DNA of 63,557 nucleotides, taken from assembly GCF_001194135.2 (NCBI RefSeq), contig NC_068986.1, forward strand, positions 26,260,970-26,324,526, written 5' to 3'. Positions 47,890-50,800 of this stretch are shown one piece after another; the first letter of the stretch is position 1; each line of letters begins with the position of its first letter. The notes below the pieces were generated by a model. That model was not told the DNA's origin, made no database searches, and saw only the letters and a program-made list of their open reading frames with translations. The stretch is from Octopus bimaculoides. Its lineage: Eukaryota. The translations under genes and the position numbers were made by a program.

Positions 47890-50800
47890 TTAAGAGTCAT
47901 CACTTTCTGAACTGTTATCTTGGTCTTTTCTGTTTTTTTGTTTTATTGGTAATGGACCATAGTTCTGAGCAGCATCATTTGCAATGTTTTCATTGTCCCA
48001 TATAATTAGCTTTTCAAATTTGTTTGCTAGAATATGGGGATTCAATTTTAATGGACGGTTGCAAAGGCTCTGGCTTTGCTTGTTCTGTCTAGTTAGATGT
48101 TCAGTTGGAAGTCTGTAACGACTGTCAAAGTCACAACTTCCTCCTGACTTTTGACGAGTTTGCTTTTTTTCACATTGGTTCTTTTCTGCAGCATATTTCA
48201 ATGAGTCTGCTTCAGTTGCTGATAGCAGTTGTTCTTTCGGGCTTAGAAAAGATGCTGTTCGTCTGCTTCCTGTTTGCTGTCTTCCAGTATGAGTTTCACT
48301 TTTGCGTTCTAGGTTCACTCTATCTTTTACTTTCATTTCATTAAAACTATCATTTATATTTGATGACTTGCTTTGATTTGGTTTCTTAATATTTAATTTT
48401 GTTGGATGTTGTTTCTGTGGCTTCTTTAATAGTGGGTGATTTGCAGAATCTGGTGATCGTTGCATATTTGATATATTACATTGCTCTTTGTTTTTTTCTC
48501 TTTTGTGTTCATGGATCATCTCGGGTTTTTTACTTCTGTGTTCTTCAGACTTCCGAGATTTGGCTGTGTCTCTGTGGGATGGAATTGGTTGTAGGCTATT
48601 GTCTTCACAATAAATGTTTAAATGTTTTGGCAAGTATTCTGAGCCAGTTGAAAATTGTTTTCCTTGCAGTTCTGTTATATAATGGCACAGTGCTTTAGGG
48701 GACAGTTCATCAACCTGAAAGAGTAGCATAATTTAATATATTGAAGTACCTTTTTTTTTTTCTTTTTATTTGTTGTCTTTTTTTTAAGTAATAGGTTTAC
48801 TTACTTCATGTTCAATAAAAAAAGGTTGTGTTGCTATTGGTTCATCAGAGGGACAGCAGTAACTCTTTAAATAGGGGTGCTGTAGTGCTTCCTCTGCACT
48901 TATTCGTTGACTGGAGTTAACAGTTAGCATTTTCTCAATCAAATTCAGAGCTGTAAGTAATGTATAGATACTTTAGAGTAAGGGATGGTATATATATATA
49001 TCTATCTTGCCAATATTTGAAAGAATTGATATTCTTCTACACATTATGTTGAGGGCCTGTTTACAGAAACAATTGGAATAAATTTAAACTGGCCATATCC
49101 AGCCTAAATATTCTACATGTCTGATGTTAAAACTAGCCTTTCAGATGTACATTATATCATTCTAAAATACTCAGCATCAAAACTTTTAAGCTGACTGATA
49201 GTGCAAGATTAATTCCAAAGCGTGAATAAATAAGCATTGTATTTTAATAGTAATCTGAATGTTGAAAGGCGTTAAACACGTAAATTATTTCAGGATTTCT
49301 AGAAAGAGAATTTATGACTTGCTTAAACATATTTGGACAGCATATAATTCCTCACTACTACTGTCTAACCATTAGAAGGAATATTTACCTGATGGGTCTA
49401 TTGTTGGATAAGTATCACGGAGTGTTTTTTCAGGTACCCGTGGAATCCGTTTCATCACACTTTTTGGCAAGACTTGAGTTACTCTGTTCCAGTCATTATC
49501 TGAGATGTTCACTAATTGAAGAATTAAACTGATCTGTTCCATATCATGAGAACCAGGTAACAGAGGTTGACCAATCAACATTTCCATAAATATACATCCA
49601 GCACTCCAAATATCAATAGCTTTAGTATAATCATTTGGAGAAATAATTAATTCTGGAGAACGATACCAACAAGTACCTACTTGATCTGTGAGAAAACCCT
49701 GTAAAAGATAAATTTGAGAAAGATTAAAAAGACTATGATGATCCCAAGCAGGGCTGAAGTATTTAACCATTTTGTTACAAGAGGAAGAACATTGCTTTTC
49801 AATTGGGAATAGTTTGGCTAAGGGTTTTAATTTGGTTTCAATAAATTTGTATCAAAAAGGGCTATAAATATTTACGCCTACTTAATGTAGGGTAATGTTT
49901 AGTTGCTGGTGTGCAAACTAGCTAATTGGATAGTGCAATTTTAGCTTAGATTGCACATTATTCACTGAAGATATTTACTTTGAAAAAGAGCAAGTACTTA
50001 GGAACCTTCGATTACAATAGGGCAGATATGTCATTTTAATGTTCATATTTTCATGGGTTGAATCATTCAGGTTTATAGCTGTATGCTTTTCCTGTTGTCA
50101 AGCATGCTAATGTCTTCAACAAAGATTGAGAAGGAAAGACACTACTTGCATGATGGTAGCACTTAACTATGATGTGAAGGTAAGGAGACAGCAACATGCC
50201 TTTATAAGAAGCTTCTTTCAATTTCTACCAAATCTCACAAGGCTTTGGTCAACCTGAGACTAAGTAGATGTACCTGCTCAAAATACCATGCAGTGAGACA
50301 ATCCAAAACCATGTGGTTGAGAAGCAACCACATGTTTAAGACAATCTGAGAAATTTATAATCCATGGCCTCTGCCTCCTGGCTCACTTATTCGTATTTTT
50401 ACTTCATTGGACACTAGACTCTGTGAAGACCTGTTGAGGAAATCGAACCAAATTCGATGATTGGCACCCATGCCAACCTTTCCTTCATTGGATACTAAAC
50501 TCTGCTTGTGAAGACCTGTTGGAGTAATTGAACCGTATTCAATGACTGGCACCTGTGCCAGTGGAGCACTAACAGCACCCAGAGCAGCTGTCTGGCTTCC
50601 GTGCCAGCGGCACATAAATAGCACTATTTGAGCATGATCGTTACCAGCATTGCCTTACTGGCACGTTAGAAAACATTCAAGCGAGGTTGTTGCCAGTGTC
50701 ACTAGGCTGGCTCCTGTGCAGGTGGCACGTAAAAAACACCATTTTGAGCATGGCTGTTGCCAGTACCGACTGACTGGCCCTCATGCTGGTGGCACGTAAA

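What the first reader, a model, noticed from the sequence alone, without database searches (positions are those of the whole stretch)
49651..49698. ERK3/4-type kinase with a hybrid activation segment: T-D-Q, TCWY and SPE
Seen: the spliced activation segment reads [15 protein letters not shown]|[19 protein letters not shown]. Established: vertebrate ERK3/ERK4 have S-E-G in place of T-x-Y and, uniquely, S-P-R in place of A-P-E. Here the phospho-acceptor is Thr, the Tyr position is Gln, the TRWY/TKWY basic residue is Cys, and the subdomain VIII Glu is retained. The Glu could still pair with the Arg of QRISAEEAL. The rest of the domain is clearly ERK3-like. ERK3/4 are absent from Drosophila and C. 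elegans and have often been described as vertebrate/chordate-restricted. Inference: this is a protostome orthologue preserving an intermediate state, with SPR a later innovation, and it may be activated differently from PAK-phosphorylated Ser189.
Basis: partly seen in the sequence, partly recalled or inferred. Interest (0 to 1): 0.75.

Follow-up and report, generated by a model that had tools for sequence, protein, structure and literature searches.

The report
Octopus ERK3/4-type MAP kinase gene
This is the ordinary, intact octopus copy of the ERK3/ERK4 signalling kinase; its odd-looking activation loop (Thr-Asp-Gln, a Cys, and Ser-Pro-Glu) is the normal form in molluscs, and invertebrate ERK3/4 genes are already catalogued.

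Summary
On the minus strand, a canonical GT-AG intron joins 51010 to 49698, giving [15 protein letters not shown]|[19 protein letters not shown]. My four-exon, 619-aa model matches the NCBI protein LOC106880733 of Octopus bimaculoides exactly. An intronless cDNA contig from another cephalopod crosses the same junction. The same phase-0 intron is present in scallop and bat MAPK6.

The protein belongs to the ERK3/4 (MAPK4/6) clade: 88% neighbour-joining bootstrap, 85.5% with the activation segment removed. It does not group with ERK1/2, ERK5, ERK7, NLK, p38 or JNK.

The "hybrid" loop is not peculiar to octopus. All 23 mollusc sequences read L-T-D-x-x-G-T-C-W-Y-R-[S/A]-P-E, and an annelid also has GTCWY. 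Every non-vertebrate sequence sampled keeps the subdomain VIII Glu. Only vertebrates, lamprey included, have SEG plus TKWY plus SPR. So "SPR is a later innovation" holds. Thr and Glu are ancestral; Asp and Cys are derived in lophotrochozoans, and Gln only in cephalopods.

Novelty is low. ERK3-subfamily genes were reported in Ciona and sea urchin (2011) and oyster (2016). A 2024 preprint already describes the T-x-x to S-E-G trajectory.

Activation by a kinase other than PAK is plausible, because PAKs prefer Ser, but it is untested.

The parts
51010..51588 (-). Coding exon 1 (ATG at 51588; residues 1-193). It holds the Gly loop GIGGNG (51478-51495), VAIKK (51424-51438), the alpha-C Glu, HRDLKPSN (51094-51117), DFGLAR (51037-51054) and ends ...DSDYTHK.
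   Evidence: The acceptor ccag lies just upstream of the ATG, so a 5'UTR exon lies further upstream. The donor is AAA|gttagt.
49699..51009 (-). Intron 1 (1311 nt, phase 0, GT-AG), inside the activation segment between HK and G.
   Evidence: It is absent from the cephalopod cDNA contig L001. The same position is used in scallop and bat MAPK6.
49389..49698 (-). Coding exon 2 (residues 194-297): [19 protein letters not shown] through the MAPK insert.
49681..49689 (-). T197-D198-Q199, the position of the T-x-Y / S-E-G phospho-acceptor motif.
   Evidence: It aligns with human ERK3 S-E-G. T-D is invariant in 23/23 mollusc sequences and the third residue varies.
49663..49677 (-). G-T-C203-W-Y. Cys replaces the Arg/Lys of TRWY/TKWY.
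   Evidence: GTCWY is invariant in 23/23 molluscs and present in the annelid Owenia.
49651..49659 (-). S207-P208-E209, the subdomain VIII motif (APE in most kinases, SPR in vertebrate ERK3/4).
   Evidence: Motif map across taxa.
48805..48950 (-). Coding exon 3 (completes the split Ala298 codon, then residues 299-345). It holds subdomain XI ...[10 protein letters not shown] (48883-48912) and the start of the C34-type region, including F-F-I-E-H-E (48805-48822).
   Evidence: The upstream intron (phase 1, in an Ala codon) is shared with scallop and bat MAPK6.
47890..48714 (-). Coding exon 4 (residues 346-619 plus stop): a low-complexity, basic C-terminal extension. It contains two motifs conserved in molluscs, [11 protein letters not shown] within 48301-48336 and [13 protein letters not shown] at 48094-48132.

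Best explanation
The window carries the intact Octopus bimaculoides orthologue of vertebrate ERK3/ERK4 (MAPK6/MAPK4), an atypical MAP kinase.

Shown:
- The gene model, the splice junction and membership of the ERK3/4 clade.
- A complete catalytic core: Gly loop, VAIK Lys, alpha-C Glu, HRD, Asn and DFG.
- An activation loop with one phospho-acceptor (Thr197) and no Tyr.
- Retention of the subdomain VIII Glu and the subdomain XI Arg.
- A conserved F-x-I-E-x-E motif directly after the kinase domain.

Inferred from what is established for mammalian ERK3/4:
- The kinase is switched on by a single phosphorylation of Thr197, made by a non-MAP2K kinase or by itself. The phosphate would be read by the retained RD-pocket arginines.
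- The phosphorylated kinase uses the F-x-I-E-x-E motif to bind and activate an MK5 (MAPKAPK5) orthologue, which exists in molluscs.

The T-D-x / GTCWY / SPE loop is the standard mollusc form of this kinase. Thr and Glu are ancestral. Cys is a lophotrochozoan substitution at a site that lost its job of binding phospho-Tyr. S-E-G, Lys and S-P-R arose on the vertebrate stem.
For: - Identity: 100% match to the NCBI octopus protein. Pfam Pkinase over residues 27-324, E 2e-66.
- Family by similarity: the best solved structure is human MAPK6 at 381 bits, against 296 bits for ERK2.
- Family by tree: the neighbour-joining ERK3/4 clade of 34 sequences (cnidarian to vertebrate) has 88% bootstrap, or 85.5% without the activation segment. 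The mollusc clade has 100%.
- Gene structure: two of the three introns sit at the same position and phase as in bat MAPK6, and all three match scallop.
- Transcript evidence: a cDNA contig from another cephalopod crosses the junction.
- Constraint: pN 0.08 against pS 0.80.
- Motif map.
- Docking motif: F-x-[IV]-E-x-E-[VI]-D in all 23 mollusc sequences, against FHIEDEVD in ERK3 and FRIEDEID in ERK4.
- Partner: an MK5 orthologue in oyster, EKC33846.1, 60.5% identical to human MAPKAPK5 (PMC4883820 table S1).
- Literature for the mechanism: PAK phosphorylates the SEG Ser of ERK3 (PMC7663056).
Against: - No biochemical data exist for any invertebrate ERK3/4, so phosphorylation of Thr197 and MK5 binding are inferred only.
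- The docking motif differs from the vertebrate one at two positions (FFIEHE against FHIEDE).
- PAKs are Ser-selective (PMC3898841), so the vertebrate upstream kinase may not apply.
- No RNA-seq from O. bimaculoides itself was examined.
- The tree is neighbour-joining, not maximum likelihood. Support for the bilaterian subclade is low (54%, or 26.5% without the loop).
Confidence: 0.85

Rival explanations
1. Same gene, different upstream control. In lophotrochozoans the acceptor Thr is phosphorylated by a Thr-preferring kinase or by autophosphorylation rather than by group I PAKs. On this view the PAK-ERK3/4 link arose with the Thr-to-Ser change in deuterostomes.
For: - Thr is invariant in molluscs, annelid, echinoderms and cnidarians. 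Ser occurs only in hemichordates, Ciona and vertebrates.
- PAKs are Ser-selective through their DFG+1 Phe (PMC3898841).
- The 2024 preprint also places the T-to-S change late.
Against: - Ser preference is a matter of rate, not an absolute rule.
- The residues just before the acceptor (H-K-G-x-L) are the same as in vertebrates.
- No experiment bears on it.
Confidence: 0.35
2. The invariant Cys203 is a gained regulatory site, for example a redox or other thiol switch in the P+1/activation segment, rather than a neutral replacement of a basic residue that was no longer needed.
For: - GTCWY is invariant in 23/23 molluscs and in the annelid Owenia. The same position is R, Q, L, T or K in other lineages.
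- That degree of conservation implies constraint on the Cys itself.
Against: - Conservation alone does not show regulation. A buried packing role would look the same.
- One unnamed sequence, a weakly supported (40%) sister to the mollusc clade, has Thr there (P0093).
Confidence: 0.15
3. The protein belongs to another MAPK subfamily (ERK1/2, ERK5, ERK7 or NLK) and only resembles ERK3/4 in its loop.
For: ERK2 is the next-best structural family at 296 bits. ERK1/2 is the weakly supported (20%) sister group of the ERK3/4 clade.
Against: - The ERK3/4 clade keeps 85.5% bootstrap when the activation segment is deleted.
- Intron positions are shared with MAPK6.
- The C34-type F-x-I-E-x-E motif is present.
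- No TEY, TQE, TGY or TPY motif is present.
Confidence: 0.02
4. The reading is an annotation or splicing artefact, or the gene is a pseudogene.
For: No O. bimaculoides transcript was inspected directly.
Against: - All splice sites are canonical and the frame is open for 619 aa.
- The model is identical to the NCBI one.
- A cDNA from a relative crosses the junction.
- The intron position is conserved.
- Purifying selection is strong.
Confidence: 0.02

Closest known systems
Vertebrate ERK3 (MAPK6) and ERK4 (MAPK4)
   Same: - About 55% identity over the kinase domain, and the best PDB match (7aqb, 6yky).
- A single activation-loop acceptor preceded by H-K-G-x-L, with no Tyr.
- Ser-Pro at the start of the subdomain VIII motif.
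- The [10 protein letters not shown] segment.
- An F-x-I-E-x-E-V-D motif after the kinase domain, followed by a long C-terminal extension.
- Two shared intron positions.
   Different: - T-D-Q instead of S-E-G.
- Cys instead of Lys in T-x-W-Y.
- S-P-E instead of S-P-R.
- FFIEHE instead of FHIEDE or FRIEDE.
- A C-terminal tail unrelated in sequence, carrying the mollusc-only motif DFDxxYRLPTEH.
- The third intron is at a different place, and the bat gene has one extra intron.
Mollusc ERK3-subfamily kinases (for example Crassostrea gigas EKC33420.1 'MAPK6', classed CMGC/MAPK/ERK3 in the oyster kinome, PMC4883820; NCBI 'MAPK4-like/MAPK6-like' of bivalves and chiton)
   Same: - 58-67% identity in the kinase domain.
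- The same L-T-D-x-x-G-T-C-W-Y-R-[S/A]-P-E loop.
- The same docking motif and the same C-terminal DFDxxYRLPTEH motif.
- The same three intron positions in scallop.
   Different: - The third loop residue is Q in cephalopods, but N or G in bivalves, C in Solemya and R in the chiton.
- The chiton has APE.
- The octopus tail is shorter (619 aa against about 700-745).
Other invertebrate ERK3/4 orthologues (Aurelia aurita 'ERK3' ARJ54256.1; Ciona intestinalis MAPK NP_001071990.1; sea urchin, sea star, crinoid, hemichordate and annelid Owenia proteins)
   Same: - The same clade (88% bootstrap).
- One acceptor, no Tyr.
- The subdomain VIII Glu is retained.
   Different: The loop details differ by lineage:
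- Aurelia: LTEL..STRYYRAPE
- Owenia: LTEN.GTCWYRAPE
- Crinoid: LTDN.TTRCYRSPE
- Urchins and sea stars: LTQN.ST[RQ]WYRSPE
- Hemichordates: LSEN.STRWYRSPE
- Ciona: LSMT.TSTWYQSPE
Conventional ERK1/2
   Same: The next-closest family (about 45% identity). It shares the GFLT start of the loop, the HRD/DFG core and the subdomain VIII Glu.
   Different: ERK1/2 has T-E-Y dual phosphorylation by MEK1/2, ATRWYRAPE, and neither a C34 region nor a long tail. The octopus protein does not group with it.

Membership tests
ERK3/4 (MAPK4/MAPK6) subfamily, broad metazoan sense | The kinase domain groups with ERK3/ERK4 to the exclusion of ERK1/2, ERK5, ERK7, NLK, p38 and JNK. | tested here: met
   NJ bootstrap is 88%, or 85.5% with the activation segment removed. 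PDB scores are MAPK6 381 bits against ERK2 296 bits.
ERK3/4 (MAPK4/MAPK6) subfamily, broad metazoan sense | The activation loop has a single Ser/Thr acceptor and has lost the Tyr of T-x-Y. | tested here: met
   T197-D-Q aligns with S189-E-G of human ERK3.
ERK3/4 (MAPK4/MAPK6) subfamily, broad metazoan sense | A conserved region after the kinase domain (C34) carrying the FRIEDE/FHIEDE-type MK5 docking motif. | tested here: met
   F340-F-I-E-H-E-V-D. F-x-[IV]-E-x-E-[VI]-D is found in 23/23 molluscs and in deuterostome orthologues. Binding itself was not tested.
ERK3/4 (MAPK4/MAPK6) subfamily, broad metazoan sense | Gene structure shared with MAPK6. | tested here: met
   The HK|G phase-0 intron and the phase-1 intron in the Ala before L-x-[FL]-[LI]-E are both shared with bat MAPK6. 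The third intron differs.
Vertebrate-type ERK3/ERK4 (narrow textbook definition) | An S-E-G activation motif. | tested here: not met
   T-D-Q. Among the sequences sampled, SEG is seen only in lamprey and jawed vertebrates.
Vertebrate-type ERK3/ERK4 (narrow textbook definition) | S-P-R in place of A-P-E in subdomain VIII. | tested here: not met
   S-P-E. Every non-vertebrate orthologue sampled keeps Glu.
Vertebrate-type ERK3/ERK4 (narrow textbook definition) | Phosphorylation of the loop acceptor by group I PAKs, and activation of MK5. | not testable with these tools
   Context only. An MK5 orthologue is listed for oyster, and PAKs prefer Ser.
Conventional MAPKs (ERK1/2, ERK5, p38, JNK) | A T-x-Y dual phosphorylation motif read by the TRWYR arginines. 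| tested here: not met
   There is no Tyr at +2 (it is Gln), and the first Arg is replaced by Cys.
NLK | A T-Q-E loop with the VTQYYRAPE context, and grouping with NLK. | tested here: not met
   The loop differs. The protein is 38% identical to the NLK reference against 55% to ERK3, and lies in a separate part of the tree.

The most novel reading that the evidence does not exclude
Lophotrochozoan ERK3/4 kinases may form a separately regulated branch of the family. Their strictly conserved Thr acceptor and Cys203, at the old phospho-Tyr-binding Arg position, would put them under a different upstream input: a Thr-preferring kinase, autophosphorylation or thiol chemistry. The PAK-to-ERK3/4 link and the SPR change would then be vertebrate inventions. 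The MK5 output, through F-x-I-E-x-E, would be the ancient conserved part of the pathway.
Probability: 0.2. Interest if true: 0.5.

Novelty: new member of a known kind. Interest (0 to 1): 0.22.

Why it matters
It matters little as a discovery. The gene is already predicted in NCBI, and ERK3-subfamily kinases are already listed for oyster, sea urchin, Ciona and a jellyfish. The T-x-x to S-E-G history is already in a preprint.

Three modest gains come from this check:
- The octopus 'uncharacterized protein' can be named an ERK3/4 orthologue.
- The motif map shows that S-P-R and T-K-W-Y, like S-E-G, are confined to vertebrates. The subdomain VIII Glu and the acceptor Thr are ancestral.
- An invariant Cys in GTCWY and a C-terminal DFDxxYRLPTEH motif mark the mollusc proteins. 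Both are simple handles for anyone who wants to study ERK3/4-MK5 signalling in a single-copy invertebrate system.

Tried and rejected
- I looked for verified NLK and ERK7 reference sequences in the PDB. There is no NLK structure. Only Toxoplasma ERK7 is available, and I used it.
They may contain small errors.
- The representative search returns unnamed proteins. Cluster look-up named only some of them: Antedon, Ciona, Aurelia and Oculina. Seven ERK3/4-like representatives remain without a taxon: P0132, P0133, P0145, P0150, P0156, P0093 and P0203.
- Searching with P0093 did not reveal its own species, but it did bring in the annelid Owenia.
- Relationships inside the ERK3/4 clade are not resolved. 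The bilaterian subclade has 54% support, and the grouping of ERK3/4 with ERK1/2 has 20%. I drew no conclusion about whether the Ser acceptor arose once or twice.
- dN/dS could not be given as a ratio because synonymous sites are saturated.
- I considered a structure prediction to test the Glu209-Arg312 pair. I dropped it because the tool returns no coordinates.
- I considered searching for an octopus MK5. A human query would have filled the list with vertebrate hits, so I relied on the oyster kinome table instead.
- No gastropod, arthropod or nematode orthologue appeared among the named hits. The listings are truncated, so this is not evidence of loss.
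Full report
**Observation.** On the minus strand, an exon ends ...GATTCAGACTACACTCACAAA at 51010 and is followed by gttagt. The next exon begins after ttttacag at 49698. It reads GGT TTT CTC ACA GAT CAA GTA GGT ACT TGT TGG TAT CGT TCT CCA GAA, ending at 49651.

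**Gene model.** I extended this to four coding exons: 51588-51010, 49698-49389, 48950-48805 and 48714-47890. All introns are GT-AG and the frame is open for 619 aa. The protein is 100% identical over its full length to NCBI 'uncharacterized protein LOC106880733 [Octopus bimaculoides]'. So the window is octopus DNA, and the model agrees with the public annotation.

**Is the junction real?** Two independent lines say yes.
- A 2545-nt Logan contig (L001, run SRR31864758) carries an uninterrupted 675-aa ORF, 86.6% identical to the octopus kinase domain. It aligns to window 51588-51011 and then directly to 49700-49426. It is therefore a cDNA-like sequence lacking the intron, and it reads [18 protein letters not shown] across the join. 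In the tree it sits with Octopus and Argonauta at 100% support.
- The scallop gene (L003) and the bat MAPK6 gene (L002) both have a phase-0 intron after ...S-H-K, before G-x-L-[TS].

The second octopus intron, phase 1 in an Ala codon, is also shared with both genes. The third is shared with scallop only.

Between octopus and L001 the kinase domain has pN 0.08 and pS 0.80. That indicates strong purifying selection.

**What it is.** Pfam finds one protein kinase domain over residues 27-324. The catalytic machinery is complete:
- GIGGNG
- VAIKK
- the alpha-C Glu in FRELRI
- HRDLKPSN
- DFG

Against all solved structures, human MAPK6/ERK3 scores 381 bits and the best ERK2 scores 296.

I built a neighbour-joining tree on 314 columns from 57 kinase domains. 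It includes ERK1/2, ERK5, p38/Hog1, JNK, NLK, ERK7, plant and fungal MAPKs, with a CDK as outgroup. The octopus protein falls inside a 34-sequence ERK3/4 clade with 88% bootstrap. The mollusc subclade has 100%. With the whole activation segment deleted, the values are 85.5% and 99.5%, so the grouping does not depend on the loop.

Directly after the kinase domain lies FFIEHEVD. It aligns with FHIEDEVD of ERK3 and FRIEDEID of ERK4, and takes the form F-x-[IV]-E-x-E-[VI]-D in all 23 mollusc sequences. From my own knowledge, this is the motif through which ERK3/4 dock MK5 (Aberg et al. 2009). I did not check that paper here.

**How unusual is the loop?** It is not unusual for a mollusc. All 23 mollusc sequences recovered (cephalopods, many bivalves, Solemya, a chiton) read L-T-D-x-[VIL]-G-T-C-W-Y-R-[S/A]-P-E. 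The residue after T-D varies: Q in cephalopods, N or G in bivalves, C in Solemya, R in the chiton.

| Lineage | Loop |
|---|---|
| Jellyfish Aurelia (deposited as 'ERK3') | LTEL..STRYYRAPE |
| Coral Oculina | LTHS..STLWYRSPE |
| Annelid Owenia | LTEN.GTCWYRAPE |
| Crinoid Antedon | LTDN.TTRCYRSPE |
| Sea stars and urchins | LTQN.ST[RQ]WYRSPE |
| Hemichordates | LSEN.STRWYRSPE |
| Ciona | LSMT.TSTWYQSPE |
| Lamprey and jawed-vertebrate ERK3 and ERK4 | LSEG.VTKWYRSPR |

By simple parsimony:
- The acceptor Thr, an acidic +1 residue, the Arg of T-R-W-Y and the subdomain VIII Glu are ancestral.
- Cys is a derived state shared by molluscs and an annelid.
- SEG, Lys and SPR are vertebrate-only.

'Intermediate state' does not: octopus combines ancestral residues with lineage-specific ones.

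The Glu of SPE and the Arg of ...QRISAEEAL align with the ERK2 residues in ...RAPE and ...KRIEVEQAL. The usual ion pair is therefore possible. I could not measure it.

**Likely mechanism.** The following is inferred, not shown.
- HRD, the DFGLAR Arg and the alpha-C arginines are retained. This makes it an RD kinase that should need a phosphate on the loop, and Thr197 is the only candidate.
- In mammals the equivalent Ser is phosphorylated by group I PAKs rather than by a MAP2K (PMC7663056). The phosphorylated kinase then binds and activates MK5.
- An MK5 orthologue is listed for oyster (EKC33846.1, 60.5% identical to human MAPKAPK5; PMC4883820 table S1). Older statements said MK5 is absent from invertebrates (PMC3419095).
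- A Thr197-phosphorylated kinase feeding an MK5 orthologue is therefore the most likely mode of action.
- PAKs are Ser-selective through their DFG+1 Phe (PMC3898841). The upstream kinase may therefore differ in animals with a Thr acceptor. That is a reasonable but untested idea.
- From textbook ERK2 structure knowledge, the Arg replaced by Cys contacts phospho-Tyr. With no Tyr, that role is gone. The strict conservation of Cys across molluscs and Owenia nevertheless suggests it has some role of its own.

**Comparison with what is known.**
- ERK3/4 were long called vertebrate- or chordate-restricted. Li et al. 2011 already reported orthologues in Ciona and marine invertebrates and argued against that view (PMC3202601).
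- The 2016 oyster kinome lists EKC33420.1 as CMGC/MAPK/ERK3.
- An Aurelia protein is deposited as 'ERK3'.
- A 2024 preprint traces ERK3/4 to the choanozoan stem. It states that in early-diverging animals the first acceptor is conserved while the following residues vary. It places the Thr-to-Ser change on the chordate stem and the fixation of SEG in vertebrates (10.1101/2024.10.01.616093).
- A term search of that preprint's main text found no mollusc, protostome, lophotrochozoan or spiralian terms, and no 'S-P-R'. The SPE/SPR and Cys mapping given here therefore appears to be a small addition.

**Verdict.** The family assignment and 'SPR is late' are supported. The 'hybrid/intermediate' reading and the novelty claim are not. 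This is a new, previously unnamed member of a known kind, with a lineage-typical activation loop. Interest is low.

**Limits.**
- The tree is neighbour-joining only.
- No octopus RNA-seq was examined.
- There is no biochemical evidence.

Noticed in passing
window 41268-47400, + strand: A multi-exon elongation factor 2 gene lies convergent with the kinase gene. Exon translations include [53 protein letters not shown] and [29 protein letters not shown]. Pfam GTP_EFTU matches the first exon at E 9e-18. Its 3' end lies within about 0.5 kb of the kinase stop codon at 47890.
   Followed up: partly
window 48094-48132 (residues 540-552) and 48301-48336, - strand: The C-terminal tail carries [13 protein letters not shown]. 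The pattern DFDxxYRLPTEH is present in all 22 full-length mollusc orthologues and in none of the other proteins fetched. A second motif, KVKDRxNxExK, is shared with several bivalves. Their function is unknown.
   Followed up: partly
window 9287-9610, + strand: A remnant of a mariner/Tc1-type transposase (Pfam Transposase_1 E 3e-7, DDE_3 E 2e-5).
   Followed up: partly
window 17832-19631, - strand: A 600-codon stop-free stretch encodes an acidic, Ser/Asp/Glu-rich sequence with no Pfam match. It is probably a large exon of another gene.
   Followed up: partly
window 4817-5152, 8019-8315, 26106-26420, 53506-53805 and others: A repeated element appears on both strands. Its translations share IHSQGFG....VEDICPR-like strings, so it is probably a dispersed SINE-like repeat.
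   Followed up: no
window 4353-4362, 46678-46687, 54297-54306: Three runs of 10 N, likely assembly gaps. One lies inside the EF2 gene region.
   Followed up: no
P0024, P0029, P0117, P0121 (database proteins, not in the window): Several high-scoring 'hits' are predicted proteins with two tandem MAPK domains: C. briggsae p38-like, a duck MAPK14 and plant MAPKs. They are probably fused gene models of tandem paralogues. Their summed scores push them above true ERK3 orthologues in the hit lists.
   Followed up: no
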